NCBI RefSeq assembly: GCF_001194135.2
Contig: NC_069001.1
Span: 11,107,455 to 11,143,239 of the forward strand
DNA: 35,785 bases
Direction of reading: 5' to 3'
Source of the DNA: Octopus bimaculoides
Taxonomy: Eukaryota
Shown: positions 25,033 through 35,785 of the stretch, in pieces
Position numbering within the stretch: the stretch's first letter is position 1
How the letters are laid out: each line of letters starts with the position of its first letter
Translations under genes and position numbers: made by a program
The notes under the pieces: model-generated
What the model was told of the DNA's origin: nothing
What the model saw: only the letters and a program-made list of their open reading frames with translations
Database searches by the model: none

Positions 25033-25225
25033 GGCGGTGAGCTGACAGAATCGTTACCGCACCGGATAAAATTCTTGTGGCATTTCGTCTGTTTTTTAGG
25101 TTCTGAGTTCATATTCCGCTGAGGTCAAATTTGTCTTTCATCCTTTCGGGTTCGATAAAATAAAGTACCAGTTGAACAATTGGGTCGGTGTAATCGACTT
25201 AAAATCTCCGCTGAAATTGCTGGCC
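25033..25225 (+). mobile_element. SINE family B copy
   Basis: GGCGGTGAGCTGACAGAATCGTTA head, TTCTGAGTTCATATTCCGCTGAGGTC, CTTTCATCCTTTCGGGTTCGATAAAAT. Confidence 0.88.
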
Positions 25226-25303
25226 AATTAAAGTGATTTTACAGAGAACCAATTAAAGTGATTCTACAGAAAACCAATTAAAGTGATTCTACAGAAAACC
25301 AAT
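25224..25303 (+). repeat. 25-bp tandem repeat x3
   Basis: AATTAAAGTGATT(T/C)TACAGA(G/A)AACC at 25226, 25251 and 25276. Confidence 0.95.
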
Positions 25304-28476: not shown

Positions 28477-29639
28477 AAGGAAATACATTTTGTGACGGTT
28501 CGTACCGGTTTCGTGTTTTCGATTTTTTCAACTAAGAGTAAAACAAAGGTGAATATTAATTAAGAAAAACAATTAAATTGAAGAAAGAATGGAATGTTTT
28601 GTAAATATTTCCATAGTGTTCTAAAAGCCAAATAACAACAACAACCACAACCACAACTTGAAATTAAGCTCTCCAGTTTAAAACCAAGCTTGCTGTTGGG
28701 TATTTTTTAAGTTTGGTGTTTCTATGGGAATAGTGTACCTTGTGAAGATCTAAAAATTTCAATGCAATCAACTGTCACCTGAAAAAATGTTGATATGTCG
28801 TCCTCTAAAAAACGCCAAGATGTGACGCCTATTCTTTAACTGGATTTTTTTCATTGTTTCAAATGCTTCTTGCTCCGCTTTACCATATTGCACTATTGAA
28901 TGCTTCACAGAAACTTTGAAATCACTACTGTACTCTAATTAAGCATGTATTTGTTCTACAAATCTGCGGACTTTGAACAAGCAATATGCGTATACCTACT
29001 CAAGGTACCAGTTTACATAGAGAGTCACTGATCCGAGCCGGGATGACATAAGTGTCTTTTGATTGTATAAGAGTTCGGTAGTGTTTATTGTAATCTATGC
29101 CACTAATTCTCTAGAAGGTGAACTGAGCAGCGCTACGCCTACGTAAGACGAAAATAAAAGAAAACGAAAAATTATCTAACACAAGAATCCATTAGATTTA
29201 ATGAACACTTTAAATGCAATAGGACGAAAGCTGTTATTACCATTCAGCATTGCTAAACAGCAATAGCTCAATGCCTATTGGCTAACGATAGTCGGAAGGA
29301 AGAGAAGGTGAAAAGAAGTGAAGTTGTTTGCACGCAACATGGGGCAAGTTGTTTCTCGATGCCACATTTAAAAATTTAAGATGGCGTCAGACACGTTATC
29401 GCTGTTTAAATACTCTGTGGAAAAAAGGGGTCCTGATTGAAGCAGCTTCCGCCTGTAATGGACTTTATCAGCTTAGGAACCTTGTTTCTCCGCTGACAAG
29501 CTTTGCCGTGATTAAAACGTTTTCACTGGAAATGTACGATAAAAGAAATGATGTTGATGTAACTTAAGTAGGGTCTTTTTTGGTGACTGCGGGGGTGGAT
29601 GTGGCTGGGAAGGAGTTGAGGTGAGAAAAGAGAGGTAGA

Positions 29640-29649
29640 TAAACAGATG

Positions 29650-29695
<46 letters not shown>

Positions 29696-31149
29696 AAGAG
29701 AGAGAAAGAGTGAAAGAGAGAGTGTGAGTGTATGTGTGTGTATGTGTGTAAAAAAATTGATAAGTATTTTAGTAAAATGAGTGATAGAGAAGAAACAGTG
29801 AATTTAAAGAGAGAGAGAGAGAAATGGAGAGAGAAAGAGAGAGAGAAATGGAGAGAGAAAGAGAGAGAGACAGAGAGAAAGAGAGAGAGACAGAGAGAAA
29901 GGGAGAGTGAGAGAGAAAGGAGGAGTGACAGAGACAGAGACAAGGAAACAGTGAGACAAAGAAGCAAAGATGTGCATTTGAAGTAAAAAAGGGAGAGGAG
30001 GAAAATGGTTGACAGAAAGAGGGAAGAAGGTAAATTTGACGACAGTGAGAATGCGTTTGTATTTGTTAATGAGAGAGGGGGAAGAGGGGGGAGAGAGAGA
30101 GAGGGAGGGAGAGAGGGAGAGAGAGAGGGNNNNNNNNNNNNNNNNNNNNNNNNNNNNNNNNNNNNNNNNNNNNNNNNNNNNNNNNNNNNNNNNNNNNNNN
30201 NNNNNNNNNNNNNNNNNNNNNNNNNNNNNNNNNNNNNNNNNNNNNNNNNNNNNNNNNNNNNNNNNNNNNNNNNNNNNNNNNNNNNNNNNNNNNNNNNNNN
30301 NNNNNNNNNNNNNNNNNNNNNNNNNNNNNNNNNNNNNNNNNNNNNNNNNNNNNNNNNNNNNNNNNNNNNNNNNNNNNNNNNNNNNNNNNNNNNNNNNNNN
30401 NNNNNNNNNNNNNNNNNNNNNNNNNNNNNNNNNNNNNNNNNNNNNNNNNNNNNNNNNNNNNNNNNNNNNNNNNNNNNNNNNNNNNNNNNNNNNNNNNNNN
30501 NNNNNNNNNNNNNNNNNNNNNNNNNNNNNNNNNNNNNNNNNNNNNNNNNNNNNNNNNNNNNNNNNNNNNNNNNNNNNNNNNNNNNNNNNNNNNNNNNNNN
30601 NNNNNNNNNNNNNNNNNNNNNNNNNNNNNNNNNNNNNNNNNNNNNNNNNNNNNNNNNNNNNNNNNNNNNNNNNNNNNNNNNNNNNNNNNNNNNNNNNNNN
30701 NNNNNNNNNNNNNNNNNNNNNNNNNNNNNNNNNNNNNNNNNNNNNNNNNNNNNNNNNNNNNNNNNNNNNNNNNNNNNNNNNNNNNNNNNNNNNNNNNNNN
30801 NNNNNNNNNNNNNNNNNNNNNNNNNNNNNNNNNNNNNNNNNNNNNNNNNNNNNNNNNNNNNNNNNNNNNNNNNNNNNNNNNNNNNNNNNNGAGAGAGAGA
30901 GAGAAAGAGAAAGAGAGAGAGAGAGAAAGAGAGAGAGATAGAGAGAGACAGATAGACAGATAGATAGACAGACATACAGACAGAAAAAGAGAGAGATAGA
31001 TAGATAGAGAGAGAGAGAGAAAGAGAGAAAGAGAGAGAGAGAAAGAAAGAGAGAGAGAGAAAGAAAGAGAGAGAGAGAGAAAGAAAGAGAGAGAGAGAAA
31101 GAGAGAGAGAGAAAGAAAGAGAGAGAAAGAAAGAAAGAGAGAGAGAGAA

Positions 31150-31180
<31 letters not shown>

Positions 31181-31250
31181 AAGAAAAAGAGTGAGTGAGA
31201 GAAAAGGAGAGCAAGAAGAAGATAGAGTATATTAGAGGAAATGAGATATG
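29640..31250. repeat. Long (GA)n-rich polypurine tract spanning a gap
   Basis: Read directly; N-gap at 30130-30890. Confidence 0.92.
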
Positions 31251-31894
31251 AGAATCATATGAGAGGCAGTGACAAAGAGATGGAGAATGTAAGACGATGA
31301 AGAGAGTTGTAGGGGTGGGATATAAAGGAGAGGAATATGACGGAGAGGAACGGGGAAACTGTTTCGAATGAGATAAAGAAATGGAGTGATGTGGTTAGGG
31401 TGGGGGAGGATATCGATGAGAATGTCGATAGGAAGATAAGGTGTAGAGGAGGCAAGGAGAAATTAAAGATATGGGCGACAGAGGATGAGATTAAATGGCG
31501 GTGAGAGCGAAGAGAATGAGGAGAAAGAGTGGGAGGAAGGGAGAGGGAGTGATGGTGTAAGGGCGAAACGTCGATGGAAGGTTTGATCTAGGAAGAAGAA
31601 AAAAAAGAAGTAGAAGAAGGAGAAGAAGAAGAAGAAGAAGAAGAACAACAACAACAAAGAGGTGGTAAGAGAGAGTGAAAAGAGGAATGGAGATCGGGAG
31701 AGATAAGAAGTGCTGGAGAAAGAGCAGCTGATTGTCGGACAAAGAGGTGAAGGGTCGACAGTTCAAACCATTTCCTCGGCGTTATATGATATTTCTAAGC
31801 AATATCAATGCCAGTCACAATCACTCAGCACTGCTCCAGAAGTAAGCTGGCACCGCAAATGTGTGTGTGTGTGTGTAGATATATATATATATAT

Positions 31895-32130
31895 ATGAGT
31901 CTATGCATATATACGTACAGGTATGTGCATACCTACGTCTACCTGTATATACAGGTGCATATCTGGGTACAGGACGTTGCAAACAAAACGTAGACAAGAA
32001 AATAATAATAATAATAACCAGAATACAGAAAACACACAAGCCACATAGAGAACATTTTCCTTCATCAGATACTCCCGTTTTAACACCGGCGTTTCGAAGA
32101 GTTGGGCAGGACGCATCGTTAAAACGGCTC
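31895..32130 (-). mobile_element. Dispersed repeat family P1, copy 2
   Basis: Homologous to 1567-1745, ends in (TA)n(TG)n and has an internal (AAT)n at ~32001-32017. A 10-bp inverted repeat lies at 32075-32084/32118-32127. Confidence 0.7.
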
Positions 32131-32484
32131 ATCCCATGAACCGCAAATTAAATTTGTATACACAAATTAAACCTGTGTCATCGAGGAATGTAGTGGCGGA
32201 CAAAAAACCAGACAGGAAAATAAACGGAAAAGAAAACAAGACAGGAATATATATATATATATACATACATACATACATACATACATATAGAGCAAAACTT
32301 CTCTAGCTTCGTTACCCGAAATATTCGCAAACAGGAACTATTTTCCTTATACGAAATTCAAGAGGACGCACGCACGCCGGATTCGTGCCGTGAGGTGCAC
32401 TGCGCGAAAGCTATTCAACATCTGATGTCTTCACAGGGTTACTCCACTGGGAACGACTTTGCCCTTCATCATGTAAGGCTTCAT

Positions 32485-32554
32485 GACGGGCCTCTTTCTG
32501 TTTCCGTCTGCCAAATCCACTCACGGGGCTTTGGTCGGCGCGAGGATATAGTAG
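32485..32554 (-). mobile_element. SINE family A internal fragment, minus strand
   Basis: GACGGGCCTCTTTCTGTTTCCGTCTGCCAAATCCACTCAC..GGCTTTGGTCGGC matches 6033-6105. Confidence 0.85.
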
Positions 32555-32565
32555 TAATCCTTCTC

Positions 32566-32602
32566 AGTGGATTTGGTTGACGAAAACTGGAAGAAGACCC
32601 TC

Positions 32603-32637
<35 letters not shown>

Positions 32638-33074
32638 AAAGATAATAAGAGTGAAAAAACTACAGAAGGCTTGTGTTACATGGTTAAAGTATATATTTAA
32701 ATTATGTCAGAAACATGTTATAAAATCTTTTTGGTATATAAACATTTTATTTTTAGAAATAACCGGTTTCGTGTTGTCTTTTCAAATTTCTCTACTTCAT
32801 TGTAACGTGTTCGTTCCAGTCTGAAAAAGAAGAGAACTCTTCTTTTTCAGATTGAAGCGAACACGTTACAATGAAGTAGAGAAATTTGAAAAGACAACAC
32901 GAAACCGGTAATTTCTCAAAATCCAATGTTTATATACCAAAAAGATTTTATAACATTTTTCTGACATAATTTAAATATATACTTTAACCATGTAACACAA
33001 GCCTTCTGTAGTTTTTTCACTCTTATTATCTTTTATACATCCAAACACGTCCTTCACATACCAACTTTCTCACA

Positions 33075-33116
<42 letters not shown>

Positions 33117-33215
33117 TTTGTCTGTGTATGTTTCTCCACCACAAGCGAACTGGTGTTGGTGTATTTACGTCTCCATAACTTAGTGGTTCAGCAAAAAAGA
33201 ACCAGGAGAACGATA
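32566..33215 (+). mobile_element. 5'-truncated SINE family A interrupted by the palindromic insert
   Basis: AGTGGATTTGGTTGACGAAAACTGGAAGAAGACCCTCGT plus (TG)(TA) at 32566-32633. The 3' half TGTTGGTGTATTTACGTCTCCATAACTTAGTGGTTCAGCAAAA lies at ~33114-33215. Confidence 0.75.
32634..33037. repeat. 404-bp near-perfect inverted repeat (two 201-bp arms, 2-nt loop)
   Basis: Arms 32634-32834 and 32837-33037, centre AGAG-AA-CTCT. I count 8 mismatches and no indels by eye. Confidence 0.97.
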
Positions 33216-33279
33216 ATCAAAAGCGTTCCATCTATGATGACACTGTTTGATACCTGGCGCTTTATTATCCAACTACACC

Positions 33280-33314
<35 letters not shown>

Positions 33315-34254
33315 CTATTTATCTACTTTCAGTCTTTAGAGTGTTCTCCTTTGTCTCCGGTACAGGTCTATGATCAAAGATCTTCCAATCGTATTTTCAA
33401 TGTATACTATGATTTCCATCCGTCCTATTGCGTATGATTCGAAGGAGATTTGGTTGATATTTCGAAAACGGTTGAGCAACCAATTAAACTCTCTTTCTGT
33501 ATCTCAAGAAGTGGCAAGAATAAATACTAACAGCAACTATAACAACAACATCAACAACAACTGCAATATCAATTACAAATGCTTTCTCAAACCGCATTAG
33601 ATAAATTTAATTTAAACAGGGATCCGGAATGGAAGGGGTTGCTGGTAGAATTAGCAATAATAACAAATATTGCAACAACGATAGCAACAGTAATATATGG
33701 AAAAGCAATGAGTAATAGTAAAGACAAGAAAAGCAACATAACAGGAGAAACGGGAATAACGTCAACAATAATCGCCGTAATAACAAGCCAGAAAATAAAT
33801 TGTAAGAGCTTATTTGAAATGCATTGCGGAGGGGGTGCTGTGAGAATGGTGGAAGGAGGAAAATTAACAAGCACAATAGTGATAGCAATAATAATATTGA
33901 CTATAACGACAGAAATAATTAGTAAAAATCTTTAAAAAGAAATAAATAAATAATACAACAACTAACATAGCAATAGCTGGCAAGAGTAATTAGAGGAACA
34001 GTGAAAACGACAGAAGAGGGTGGGAAGAATCAGGTTGAATAATAATATTTGATTAGAAATTTTTATTGAATGAACGAATCGAGAGTAATAAAAGACTAAG
34101 GAAAATAATAATTATGATGTAATAATATATGATAGTTGTAATAATTATCTGAGTGAGATCATTATGATACTGGCGGTAAGTAGTTCGTTGTGAGTCGTAT
34201 GAGTAATTAACGGTCCCAGGTGTTTTTTTACAATGCCAGTAATTTCTGAGAAGC

Positions 34255-34416
34255 GGGTGGAAGTCGTTACATCGACCCCGCAAGATTTAATATAAGTACT
34301 TATTTTATCGACTCCGAAAGGATAAAAGGTAAAGTCAACATCGCTAGAATTTGAACTCAGAGTATAAAGACAGACGAAAAGTCGCTAAGCATTGTGCCGG
34401 CCGTGCTAACGATTCT
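34255..34416 (-). mobile_element. SINE family B, diverged copy lacking its first ~16 nt
   Basis: TTTTATCGACTCCGAAAGGATAAAAGGTAAAGTCAAC..GAATTTGAACTCAGA..GCTAAGCAT..GTGCTAACGATTCT. Confidence 0.85.
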
Positions 34417-34648
34417 TATTTCTTTATTGCCCACAAGGGGTTACACACAGAGGGACAAACAGGGACAGACAAACGGATTAAGTCGATTACATCGACCCCA
34501 GTACTCAACTGATACTTAATTTATCAACCCCGAAAGGATGAAAGGCAAAGTCGACCTCGGCGGAATTTGAACTCAGAATTTAGCGATGGCCGAAATACCG
34601 CTAAGCATTCCGTCCAGCGTGCTAACGATTCTGCTAGCTCGCCGCCTT
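34417..34648 (-). mobile_element. SINE family B, well-preserved copy directly joined to the previous one
   Basis: Full core GAAAGGATGAAAGGCAAAGTCGACCTCGGCGGAATTTGAACTCAGAA, with the head ending GCTCGCCGCCTT. Confidence 0.92.
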
Positions 34649-35070
34649 CCTGTTTATCAATACCAAAAACATGAGGTTATTTGATACAACACTAAGAATT
34701 CTGAAATGGAAGTTAAAGAACAGGGTTTAGTGAATACTATCTACAGTTCATAAAGGCAATGGGAAAATACTCTGAGAGAAACTTTCTAACCTAATCGTAA
34801 TTTTTCCTGGGATGGGGTATGCCTTTGGTCCACCCATTCCATCTCTCTAAAGGCATTTTCTCTTTCTTACTGATCTAGCGGGGCAGAAACAACTAAGATT
34901 GTGTTCGTCTCAACACTCGATTTCACATCAGAATTCAGGAATCTTACGAAACAAATACATATTAAGATTAGTTATAATTGTAATACAAATCTTCATCGCA
35001 AACATGAACCGTTTTCAATGAGAGCAACGAGTACAGAAAGAGCGGTTGTTGTATTCAATGGGAGTTGTTT

Positions 35071-35100
35071 TACTACTACTACTACTACTACTACTACTAC

Positions 35101-35132
<32 letters not shown>
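35071..35132. repeat. (TAC)n(AAT)n microsatellite
   Basis: Read directly from the sequence. Confidence 0.92.
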
Positions 35133-35440
35133 GCACAAAGAATATTAATATGATATGGAGGAGAAGCAAGTACTAAATCGTCAACAATAAAAGAAAAAAA
35201 AATTACACTATTAATAATAGTAAAATAAACTGATCCTAATATTCAGAGAAACAACAGCTAAACCTAACAATGAATTTTGCCCCAAGGAAAAAAAAATAGC
35301 CATTAAAAAGGAACTTATAATAAATCATTTAATAATCTAAGCACGAACATTATATAAAAAATGAGAATAGAAGATAACCCAGAGAGACACGAAGTAATGC
35401 TATCATTACCTCCCCCTCTTCTTCTTCTTCTTCTTCTTCG

Positions 35441-35462
<22 letters not shown>

Positions 35463-35471
<9 letters not shown>

Positions 35472-35785
35472 CCCGCCTCAGCGAAGGCGGAGGTATTGTT
35501 TTCAGTCGTATTTGTTTGTTTGTCCGTGGATAACATATCTCAAGAACCGCTGGATGGATTCGGATGAAACATTCAGGAATGTTTTGACCTCGTTCGTGAC
35601 TGGCACCCGAACTGATTAGATTCTGGGATCGATCCCGTAGCCCGACAAGGATTCTGGATTATTTTTCCTGTTTTTTACTTAATTTTTGAGAGCGGTCGGG
35701 TTCATTTTTAGTATTCTCGTTTGTGAGAGCAGTCGAGTCTGTTTCAGATGTTCTCATTTTAAAAATCATCTCTAGCTAATCGTTG
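35463..35785 (+). mobile_element. Probable non-autonomous Helentron-type (HINE/DINE-1-like) element, running off the window
   Basis: Starts in a TT/ATT context with hairpin CCGCCT-CAGCGA-AGGCGG (35473-35490). It continues TTTGTTTGTTTGTCCGT and GGATGGATTCGGATGAAAC, the layout I recall for HINE 5' ends. The 3' end is not visible. Confidence 0.65.

What the first reader, a model, noticed from the sequence alone, without database searches (positions are those of the whole stretch)
32634..33076. 404-bp near-perfect palindrome inserted in a SINE microsatellite
Two 201-bp arms with a 2-nt loop and ~8 mismatches, made of complex (non-microsatellite) sequence. The right arm continues for 39 unpaired nt to ...CTTTCTCACACC(TA)n, echoing the P2 ends ...ATTCTCCC(AT)n and ...ATTCTCAC(TA)n. 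It therefore looks like a retroelement 3' terminus with an inverted copy of itself; inverted terminal arrangements are known for Penelope elements. Spacer-less palindromes this long are usually unstable, so its persistence with some divergence is notable. If transcribed it gives a ~200-bp dsRNA hairpin, a potential ADAR substrate or endo-siRNA source against its own family.
Basis: partly seen in the sequence, partly recalled or inferred. Interest (0 to 1): 0.72.

Follow-up and report, generated by a model that had tools for sequence, protein, structure and literature searches.

The report
Head-to-head retroelement-end palindrome in a SINE
A real 404-bp near-perfect DNA palindrome with a 39-base extension on one side sits in the (TA)n tract of an octopus-type SINE, and it most likely is two head-to-head copies of one short retroelement end, the pattern Penelope-like elements are known to leave, so it is a tidy example of a known kind rather than something new.

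Summary
The arms are 32631-32834 and 32837-33040: 204 nt, 9 mismatches, a 2-nt centre. About 39 unpaired, A+C-rich bases follow (33038-33076), then (TA)18.

Removing 32638-33076 restores a normal tRNA-derived SINE with an unbroken (TG)n(TA)n tract. The whole 439 bp, extension included, is therefore one insert.

This matches published Penelope-like element (PLE) insertions on three points: head-to-head inverted ~200-bp terminal repeats, an optional 30-40-bp "tail" on one of them only, and a preference for (TA)n.

Membership is not proven. There is no hammerhead ribozyme, no RT or endonuclease ORF anywhere in the window, and no second copy of the arm.

The dsRNA, ADAR and siRNA ideas could not be tested.

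Main rivals:
- a palindromic TA-flanked MITE plus a separate 39-nt insert;
- a plain insertion later duplicated in inverted orientation by a replication template switch;
- a LINE end that snapped back during reverse transcription;
- an assembly artefact, unlikely because the arms differ by 4.4%.

Verdict: probably a new member of a known kind, of modest interest.

The parts
32556..32603 (+). Host SINE, end of the tRNA-derived head (positions 116-163 of the reference copy at 16670-16832)
   Evidence: blastn against the full SINE copy: 79% over 48 nt. It aligns colinearly with intact copies.
32604..32637 (+). Left part of the host SINE's internal microsatellite, (TG)7(TA)10, forming the left insertion junction
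   Evidence: Sequence read. Intact SINE copies carry the same CCCGTCG-(TA)n-(TG)n layout.
32638..32834 (-). Left arm: the inverted copy of the inserted unit, whose outer end lacks the extension. The repeat finder extends pairing to 32631 through TA-run bases.
   Evidence: Arms 32631-32834 / 32837-33040, 204 nt, 96% complementary. The 9 mismatches are listed.
32835..32836 (.). Centre of the palindrome: 2 unpaired bases (AA), read as the head-to-head junction of the two copies
32837..33037 (+). Right arm: the direct copy of the inserted unit
33038..33076 (+). One-sided 39-nt extension ('tail') of the right copy. It is A+C-rich (A12 C17 G1 T9) and is not host SINE sequence.
   Evidence: Pairing ends here. 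Composition. Unique in the window. No similarity beyond chance to the SINE or to the host flanks on either strand; 11 of 12 comparisons at or below shuffle level, and the P2b minus strand nominal only (z 2.3, 14/300). Removing it together with the arms restores a normal SINE.
33077..33113 (+). Right part of the split microsatellite, (TA)18.5, forming the right junction (host tract and/or target duplication)
   Evidence: Tandem Repeats Finder row 33077-33113; alignment of the joined flanks.
33114..33203 (+). Host SINE, start of the 3' body. The blastn match covers 33154-33203, which are positions 43-92 of the reference tail.
   Evidence: blastn 88% over 50 nt; colinear alignment from the TG-rich leader onwards.
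32485..32550 (-). Context: an inverted fragment of a SINE head (positions 97-162), head-to-head with the host SINE and 5 nt from it. This is an older, more diverged inverted duplication beside the palindrome.
   Evidence: blastn 86% over 66 nt on the minus strand; inverted repeat I17.

Best explanation
A single retrotransposition event placed two head-to-head copies of the same ~200-240-nt retroelement end into the (TA)n tract of an older SINE. The element is most likely a Penelope-like element (PLE) terminal repeat (pLTR), or a short non-autonomous derivative of one.

The two outer ends of the palindrome are element 3' ends, and the centre is where the two 5' ends meet. The right copy started 39 nt further downstream on the RNA than the left copy. 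That difference is the one-sided 'tail'.

Shown:
- The 439-bp insert is one unit inside a SINE microsatellite.
- It consists of an inverted copy, a direct copy and a one-sided 39-nt extension.
- It carries no ORF and no hammerhead ribozyme.

Inferred:
- The PLE enzyme cut the (TA)n target. cDNA synthesis was then primed either from both cut strands on a short RNA and run to its 5' end, or from one strand followed by self-priming or a template switch onto the new cDNA. Either route explains why both copies stop at the same base.
- The left junction formed at an internal TATA of the element that matches the (TA)n target.

Today the locus is most likely inert DNA. As DNA it can extrude a cruciform. 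If transcribed it would give a ~200-bp dsRNA hairpin. Neither was tested.

The stated confidence of 0.5 is a compromise between two narrower estimates: about 0.6 for 'made during reverse transcription of a retroelement end' and about 0.45 for PLE specifically.
For: 1. Joining the flanks 32540-32637 and 33077-33230 gives a sequence that aligns colinearly with intact SINE copies at 16770-17010 and 17868-18080. The 39 nt therefore belongs to the insert, not to the host. It has no similarity beyond chance to the SINE or the flanks.

2. The geometry matches published PLE insertions:
[quoted passage not shown] Head-to-head is the commonest arrangement and is attributed to self-priming (PMC3846280).
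- Here the copies are about 240 and 201 nt, a difference of 39 nt.

3. A purified PLE protein cleaves and extends both DNA strands. It starts reverse transcription at two sites, and the sequence between them is the tail. One of those starts lies in an AC-rich stem-loop (PMC11167929). The extension here is 74% A+C.

4. [quoted passage not shown]

5. Penelope-type PLEs are numerous and recently active in Octopus vulgaris (30 families). The host SINE is shared with O. vulgaris.

6. Another repeat, P2 at 12876-13075, also sits inside the (TA)n of a SINE copy in this window. These tracts are therefore recurrent landing sites.
Against: - No RT or GIY-YIG coding remnant was found. Pfam found nothing in all six frames of 31230-35785, nor in any stop-free stretch of at least 45 aa with non-repetitive composition in the rest of the window.
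- There is no hammerhead ribozyme even at E <= 10. Canonical Penelope, Neptune and Nematis pLTRs carry one.
- Naiads, which lack it and prefer (TA)n, are reported as only ancient remnants in cephalopods. The arms here are 96% alike.
- No ATG or ORF start lies near the 3' end of the arm, unlike the A. vaga pLTR.
- No second copy of the arm was seen, so it has not been shown to be a repeat family at all.
- Published inverted pLTRs usually flank a longer unit. A bare, exactly symmetric pair is inferred here, not documented.
- A target-site duplication cannot be read inside (TA)n.
Confidence: 0.5

Rival explanations
1. A palindromic non-autonomous DNA transposon (MITE) of about 396 bp (32638-33033, AAAG...CTTT) with a TA target duplication, of Tc1/mariner type. 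It would have landed in the (TA)n tract next to an unrelated, earlier 39-nt insert.
For: - TA lies directly on both sides of the core: 32636-32637 and 33034-35.
- Tc1/mariner elements always insert at TA, so (TA)n tracts are natural sinks (my knowledge).
- Near-perfect palindromic TA-flanked MITEs are a known class, for example human MADE1 and the C. elegans PALTA families (my knowledge).
- Tc1-Mariner and MITE families are numerous in O. vulgaris.
Against: - The 39 nt between the right arm and (TA)18 is not host SINE sequence. This reading therefore needs a second, independent event lying exactly against the MITE end.
- TA flanks carry no information inside a TA run.
- The terminal sequence AAAGATAATAAGAG does not resemble the CAGT-type ends I recall for Tc1-like elements. 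That is a recollection, not a test.
- No transposase remnant and no other copy are present in the window.
Confidence: 0.18
2. A two-step origin. An ordinary ~240-bp retroelement fragment (right arm plus 39 nt) first inserted into the SINE (TA)n. Later a replication fork switched template at its left end, copied 201 nt back, and returned to the original template at TATA/(TA)n microhomology, producing the inverted copy.
For: - The left junction coincides with an internal TATA of the right copy (33034-33037) that matches the (TA)n flank.
- (TA)n tracts are themselves hairpin-forming and stall forks (my knowledge).
- A second inverted duplication of SINE sequence lies 80 bp away at 32485-32603, hinting at a locally rearrangement-prone site.
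Against: - It needs two events where one suffices.
- It does not explain why the size difference falls in the 30-40-nt range typical of PLE tails.
- The neighbouring SINE inverted pair is much more diverged (~78%), so it is not part of the same event.
Confidence: 0.12
3. A 5'-truncated end of a microsatellite-targeting LINE (for example the Dong/R4 group) or of its SINE partner. Its cDNA snapped back on itself, or was twin-primed, during target-primed reverse transcription. No PLE is involved.
For: - Dong-R4 LINEs are the most numerous recently active LINEs in O. vulgaris.
- Relatives target simple repeats, and R2-like reverse transcriptases jump templates (my knowledge).
- L1 twin priming gives 5'-inverted copies (my knowledge).
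Against: - Twin priming inverts a different, upstream part of the RNA with only a small overlap. It does not produce a 200-nt exact duplicate (my knowledge).
Confidence: 0.1
4. An assembly or library artefact: a fold-back chimera, or a larger spacer between two inverted repeat copies collapsed in a short-read scaffold.
For: - The window is a gapped short-read-style scaffold with 10 N-runs.
- PLE-type inverted structures are known to cause assembly problems.
- Reads could not be consulted.
Against: - Technical fold-backs give identical arms. These differ at 9 of 204 positions, and the differences are clustered.
- The palindrome lies inside 4.9 kb of gap-free sequence with coherent SINE flanks on both sides.
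Confidence: 0.05

Closest known systems
Penelope-like element insertions with inverted pseudo-LTRs and a one-sided 'tail' (e.g. Adineta vaga Pen2a; Naiad elements; Poseidon of Anolis)
   Same: - Head-to-head inverted copies of the element's terminal ~200 bp.
- One copy 30-40 nt longer than the other (here 39; 37 and 31 in Pen2a).
- Insertion into (TA)n, as for Naiads.
- Heavy 5' truncation.
- An A+C-rich region at the reverse-transcription start.

   Different: - No ORF lies between or beside the repeats.
- No hammerhead ribozyme.
- No ORF start in the repeat.
- The two copies end at exactly the same base, with only 2 nt between them.
- No family or autonomous partner has been identified.
Palindromic TA-flanked MITEs (human MADE1 / mir-548 source; C. 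elegans PALTA-type repeats) - from my knowledge
   Same: - Almost the whole element is a palindrome.
- TA lies on both sides.
- No coding capacity.
- Would fold into a long hairpin RNA if transcribed.
   Different: - The 39-nt non-host extension on one side has no place in a cut-and-paste element.
- The core, at ~400 bp, is much longer than MADE1 (80 bp).
- Copy number and terminal motifs are unknown.
LINE-1 twin-priming 5' inversions - from my knowledge
   Same: A retrotransposition product whose 5' part is inverted relative to its 3' part. It is formed by priming from both cut target strands.
   Different: Twin priming inverts upstream sequence with a short deletion or duplication at the joint. 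Here the inverted part duplicates the same 201 nt.
Human palindromic AT-rich repeats (PATRR11/22/17) - from my knowledge
   Same: - Several hundred bp long, AT-rich (74% A+T here) and nearly perfect, with almost no spacer.
- Expected to extrude a cruciform and to be hard to clone and assemble.
   Different: - PATRRs are defined by recurrent translocation breakage, which is untested here.
- Their origin is not a transposon insertion.
- The arms here carry mismatches, three of them within 22 nt of the centre, which should dampen extrusion.

Membership tests
Penelope-like element (PLE) insertion | Inverted 5'-truncated copy or pLTR lying head-to-head with a direct copy | tested here: met
   Arms 32631-32834 and 32837-33040, 96% complementary, with the 3' ends facing outwards if the extension marks the 3' end. 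Definition taken.
Penelope-like element (PLE) insertion | Optional 30-40-bp terminal extension ('tail') on one end only | tested here: met
   39 nt at 33038-33076 (36-42 by other cuts) on the right copy only. It is not host sequence. Definition taken.
Penelope-like element (PLE) insertion | Hammerhead ribozyme motif in the pLTR (canonical Penelope/Poseidon, Neptune and Nematis; absent in Naiad/Chlamys) | tested here: not met
   An Rfam E-value scan of 32200-33500 up to E = 10 gave no hammerhead family. It returned only sub-threshold hairpin look-alikes of plant MIR families. The gathering-threshold scan of the whole window found nothing.
Penelope-like element (PLE) insertion | ORF with PLE-type RT and GIY-YIG endonuclease in the same family (autonomous partner) | not testable with these tools
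   No Pfam domain in six frames of 31230-35785, nor in the screened stop-free stretches (at least 45 aa, non-repetitive) of the rest of the window. The source genome could not be searched. Scans of other collections were empty and, by the SINE control, uninformative.
Penelope-like element (PLE) insertion | Microsatellite insertion bias ((TA)n for Naiads) | tested here: met
   The insert splits (TG)7(TA)10 | (TA)18 of a SINE. Definition taken.
Penelope-like element (PLE) insertion | pLTR contains the start of the element's ORF (as in A. vaga Pen2a) | tested here: not met
   The only ATG in the last ~100 nt of the right copy is followed directly by TAA. The feature is not universal among PLEs.
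Palindromic MITE (Tc1/mariner-type, TA duplication) | Terminal inverted repeats at both extreme ends of the inserted unit | tested here: not met
   The inserted unit defined by the SINE empty-site alignment is 32638-33076. On the right, 39 non-palindromic nt lie outside the repeat. The feature would be met only if a second, separate insert is assumed.
Palindromic MITE (Tc1/mariner-type, TA duplication) | TA target-site duplication | tested here: inconclusive
   TA flanks the 396-bp core on both sides, but the site is a TA run, so this would be seen by chance.
Palindromic MITE (Tc1/mariner-type, TA duplication) | Many dispersed copies with the same ends and structure | not testable with these tools
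   No other copy in the window or in 20 kb of O. vulgaris. No access to the genome.
Foldback (FB-type) transposon | Long inverted arms built of tandem sub-repeats | tested here: not met
   Tandem Repeats Finder reports no array inside 32638-33037. The arms are complex sequence.
LINE twin-priming inversion | Inverted 5' segment derived from upstream RNA sequence, with only a short overlap or deletion at the joint | tested here: not met
   The inverted segment duplicates the same 201 nt as the direct segment. The definition is from my knowledge.
Hairpin RNA gene (miRNA / endo-siRNA / ADAR substrate) | Transcription plus small RNAs or clustered A-to-G changes in RNA reads | not testable with these tools
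The predicted hairpin is very stable. Rfam matches are below every family's gathering score.

The most novel reading that the evidence does not exclude
The locus may be a natural record of the PLE integration reaction so far seen only in vitro. In one event, both cut strands of a (TA)n target would have primed reverse transcription of a short (~240-nt), ribozyme-less, non-autonomous PLE RNA. One strand would have used the distal RT start site and the other the proximal one, and both would have run to the RNA's 5' end. That would point to an undescribed family of very short PLE-mobilised elements in octopus that routinely land as near-perfect AT-rich palindromes. Such a family would be a steady source of cruciform-prone DNA and, where transcribed, of long dsRNA for the unusually active cephalopod ADAR system.
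Probability: 0.15. Interest if true: 0.55.

Novelty: new member of a known kind. Interest (0 to 1): 0.3.

Why it matters
If the PLE reading is right, the locus is a minimal example of the peculiar PLE insertion signature: an inverted pair plus a one-sided tail in a (TA)n target. It would come from a cephalopod, and a genome-wide census of its family could show how often PLE integration yields bare palindromes.

Near-spacerless AT-rich palindromes of this size break chromosomes in other animals and are hard to assemble. Knowing that a transposon class seeds them would matter for the quality of octopus assemblies and for genome stability.

The dsRNA/ADAR angle is attractive in cephalopods but rests on no data here.

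As it stands this is one dead, non-coding insertion in a repeat-only region.

Tried and rejected

2. Other copies of the arm:
- blastn of the arm plus tail against the window found only itself.
- A 29-nt match at 28503-28531 is at chance level (local alignment score 36 against 31 +/- 6 for shuffles).
- The terminal 24-mer and the 39-mer, each with up to 3 mismatches, are unique.
- Exact 22-mers gave 0 hits in metagenome, viral and prokaryote genome collections.
- As a control, a conserved SINE 20-mer gave only 3 chance hits with no extended similarity. Those collections therefore hold no DNA of this animal, and the negatives say nothing about copy number.

3. Fishing for spurious ORFs from other copies: concatenated stop-free frames of the arm against 5.8 billion proteins gave no hit. 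Exact look-ups of two neighbouring ORFs were not on record (the second was given with its first codon missing).

4. Sampling a related genome: the SINE antisense ORF hit one Octopus vulgaris 'hypothetical protein'. Its 20-kb locus holds several SINE copies but no arm and no P2. Sampling enough genome this way was not feasible.

5. Coding remnants: Pfam found nothing in six frames of 31230-35785, nor in the screened stop-free stretches (at least 45 aa, non-repetitive composition) elsewhere in the window.

6. Hammerhead or other RNA families: none. The sub-threshold plant MIR matches only reflect a long perfect hairpin, so I rejected them.

7. The 39-nt extension as host or P2-related sequence: rejected.

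8. Foldback-type sub-repeats in the arms: none.

Full report
**The observation**

The palindrome is real in the sequence as given. The repeat finder reports arms 32631-32834 and 32837-33040, 204 nt each, 96% complementary and 2 nt apart. A base-by-base check gives 9 mismatches, at 32633, 32714, 32747, 32748, 32754, 32761, 32814, 32816 and 32819. The centre is AA, and pairing is lost immediately outside the arms.

The outermost 6-7 nt of each arm are TA-run, so the complex palindromic core is about 32638-33034. To the right, 39 unpaired nt (33038-33076, CATCC...CTCACACC; A12 C17 G1 T9) lead into (TA)18 at 33077-33113.

As RNA the region folds into a single hairpin of -296.7 kcal/mol, against -68.5 +/- 4.7 for shuffles (z = -48). 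The arms have 26% G+C against 39% for the window. They contain no tandem sub-repeats.

**Where it sits**

The window carries several copies of a tRNA-derived SINE. The SINE has a head with A and B boxes that ends ...GAAGCCCGTCG, an internal (TA)n(TG)n tract, and a conserved 3' body.

- The best copy is at 16670-17100. Others are at 17768-18164, 6032-6196 (minus strand) and 13129-13318.
- Around the palindrome, 32556-32603 matches SINE head positions 116-163, and 33154-33203 matches the 3' body.
- Joining 32540-32637 to 33077-33230 in a script gives a sequence that aligns colinearly with the intact copies: head end, then an unbroken (TG)n(TA)n tract, then the body.

The insert is therefore the whole 439 bp at 32638-33076, including the 39 nt. 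That segment aligns no better than shuffled sequence to two SINE copies, to either host flank, or to P2a. The single nominal exception among 12 comparisons is the minus strand against P2b (z 2.3, 14 of 300 shuffles as good).

The SINE family is shared with Octopus vulgaris. Its antisense translation hits one annotated O. vulgaris protein, and the 20-kb locus around that gene holds full-length SINE copies. The window is thus from an Octopus-like genome. I did not determine the species.

**What the anatomy resembles**

A cut-and-paste element must have its inverted repeats at its very ends. Here the right repeat is followed by 39 nt that arrived with the insert. That asymmetry is what the Penelope-like element (PLE) literature describes.

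- Craig et al. 2021 (PMC8557442) state that insertions are heavily 5'-truncated. [quoted passage not shown] - Arkhipova et al. [quoted passage not shown] They attribute the prevalent head-to-head arrangement to self-priming.
- Frangieh et al. 2024 (PMC11167929) show that a purified PLE protein cleaves and extends both target strands. It initiates reverse transcription at two internal sites, and the interval between them is the tail. Initiation lies in an AC-rich stem-loop.

The present insert has copies of about 201 and 240 nt head-to-head, a 39-nt A+C-rich difference on one side only, and a (TA)n target. Penelope-type PLEs are numerous and recently active in O. vulgaris (30 families).

**Most likely mechanism**

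These steps are inferred. A PLE enzyme cut the SINE's (TA)n tract. A short RNA ending ...CTCACACC was then reverse-transcribed twice in opposite orientation. One synthesis started at the distal site and kept the tail. The other started 39 nt upstream, at an internal UAUA that also matches the (TA)n target.

Both copies end at the same base. That fits either run-off at the 5' end of a ~240-nt RNA or self-priming (a template switch) onto the fresh cDNA.

What is shown is narrower: the unit structure of the insert, its position, and its lack of coding capacity.

**What argues against PLE membership**

- No hammerhead ribozyme is present at E <= 10. Canonical PLE pLTRs have one.
- Naiads lack it, but they are reported as only old remnants in cephalopods.
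- No RT, GIY-YIG or transposase remnant exists in six frames of 31230-35785 or in the screened stop-free stretches of the rest of the window.
- No ORF start lies in the repeat.
- No second copy was found, so the family is undefined.

I therefore file it as working like a PLE inverted-pLTR pair, with membership unproven.

**Rivals**

1. A 396-bp palindromic TA-flanked MITE (32638-33033). TA does flank the core on both sides, and Tc1/mariner elements and MITEs abound in octopus. However, TA flanks mean nothing inside a TA run, and the 39 nt would need a separate insert lying exactly against the MITE end.
2. A simple 240-bp insertion followed by a replication template switch that copied 201 nt back and re-entered at TATA microhomology. 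This is plausible but needs two events and leaves the tail-sized asymmetry a coincidence.
3. A microsatellite-targeting LINE end (Dong/R4 types are active in octopus) that snapped back. The PLE authors note that tails are not seen with non-LTR elements.
4. An assembly artefact. The scaffold has 10 N-runs and reads could not be checked. Against this, artefactual fold-backs are identical, whereas these arms differ at 4.4% of positions.

**Age and stability**

The 9 differences give a JC distance of 0.0455, or 0.023 per arm. With the calibration used for O. vulgaris repeats (JC 0.09 is about 25 My and 0.2 is about 56 My), this is roughly 6 My. The estimate assumes the arms were identical at birth and ignores gene conversion between them.

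The differences are clustered: four within 15 nt and three within 6 nt near the centre. A permutation test gives P of about 0.02. The clustering could reflect error-prone synthesis at formation, or selection for central asymmetry that damps cruciform extrusion. I cannot tell which.

The 'echo' of the P2 ends is a shared heptamer and is not significant.

P2 is still informative in another way. The copy at 12876-13075 also lies inside the (TA)n of a SINE: CCCGTCG(TA)7 | P2 | (AT)n(GT)n followed by the SINE body. These tracts are therefore repeated landing sites.

The dsRNA, ADAR and siRNA proposal is structurally reasonable given the -297 kcal/mol hairpin. It has no supporting data here.

**What I could not do**

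I could not search the source genome, lay reads, or examine RNA. Scans of the metagenome, viral and prokaryote collections were empty. A SINE control shows those collections contain no DNA of this animal. A protein-space search for ORFs from other copies was empty.

**Verdict**

This is a genuine, well-delimited palindromic insertion. The best explanation is a PLE-type head-to-head retroelement end with a one-sided tail. It is a new member of a known kind and of modest interest.

Noticed in passing
window 32485-32603: An inverted SINE head fragment (positions 97-162, minus strand, 32485-32550) lies 5 nt from the host SINE head (positions 116-163, plus strand, 32556-32603). This is a second, older head-to-head inverted duplication, with arms ~78% alike, only 80 bp from the big palindrome.
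   Followed up: partly
window 12855-13318 and 16030-16212: The ~200-bp repeat 'P2' (ends ...GTAAATTCTCCC / ...TTCTCAC) is inserted in the (TA)n tract of another SINE copy: CCCGTCG(TA)7 | P2 | (AT)n(GT)n followed by the SINE body. A second P2 copy is also followed by TA/CA microsatellite. SINE (TA)n tracts look like recurrent landing sites.
   Followed up: partly
window, whole: No Pfam domain was found in six frames of 31230-35785 or in the screened stop-free stretches (at least 45 aa, non-repetitive) elsewhere. The window is repeat and microsatellite DNA with 10 N-runs totalling 3182 N, typical of a short-read scaffold.
   Followed up: yes
P0001 / L004 10001-10387 (Octopus vulgaris OX597836.1): An annotated O. 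vulgaris 'hypothetical predicted / secreted protein' of 128 aa matches the antisense translation of the SINE (74% identity). A SINE copy lies under it at L004 10050-10420, so it is probably a repeat-derived gene model.
   Followed up: partly
window 5254-5438, 10313-10380, 15269-15453, 34248-34432, 34464-34648: A second SINE-like family with the core GGTGGAATTTGAACTCAGAAC. Two copies sit 216 bp apart in tandem at 34248 and 34464.
   Followed up: no
window 19019-19984, 29600-31227, 11309-11839: Very long purine-rich arrays, split by N-runs: (GAT)n/(GAA)n of about 1 kb, (GA)n-type arrays of more than 1.5 kb, and AGG-rich 109-bp units. These are candidate triplex-forming tracts and probable causes of the assembly gaps.
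   Followed up: no
window 13634-13889, 25224-25303, 3838-3942: Small tandem arrays of complex units: 78 bp x 3.2, 25 bp x 3.2 (96% matches) and 49 bp x 2.2. Their origin is unknown.
   Followed up: no
window 32762-32909: The centre of the palindrome scores against several plant MITE-derived MIR precursor models in Rfam (e.g. MIR837, 74.8 bits against a gathering score of 117). All are below threshold and reflect only the long perfect hairpin.
   Followed up: yes
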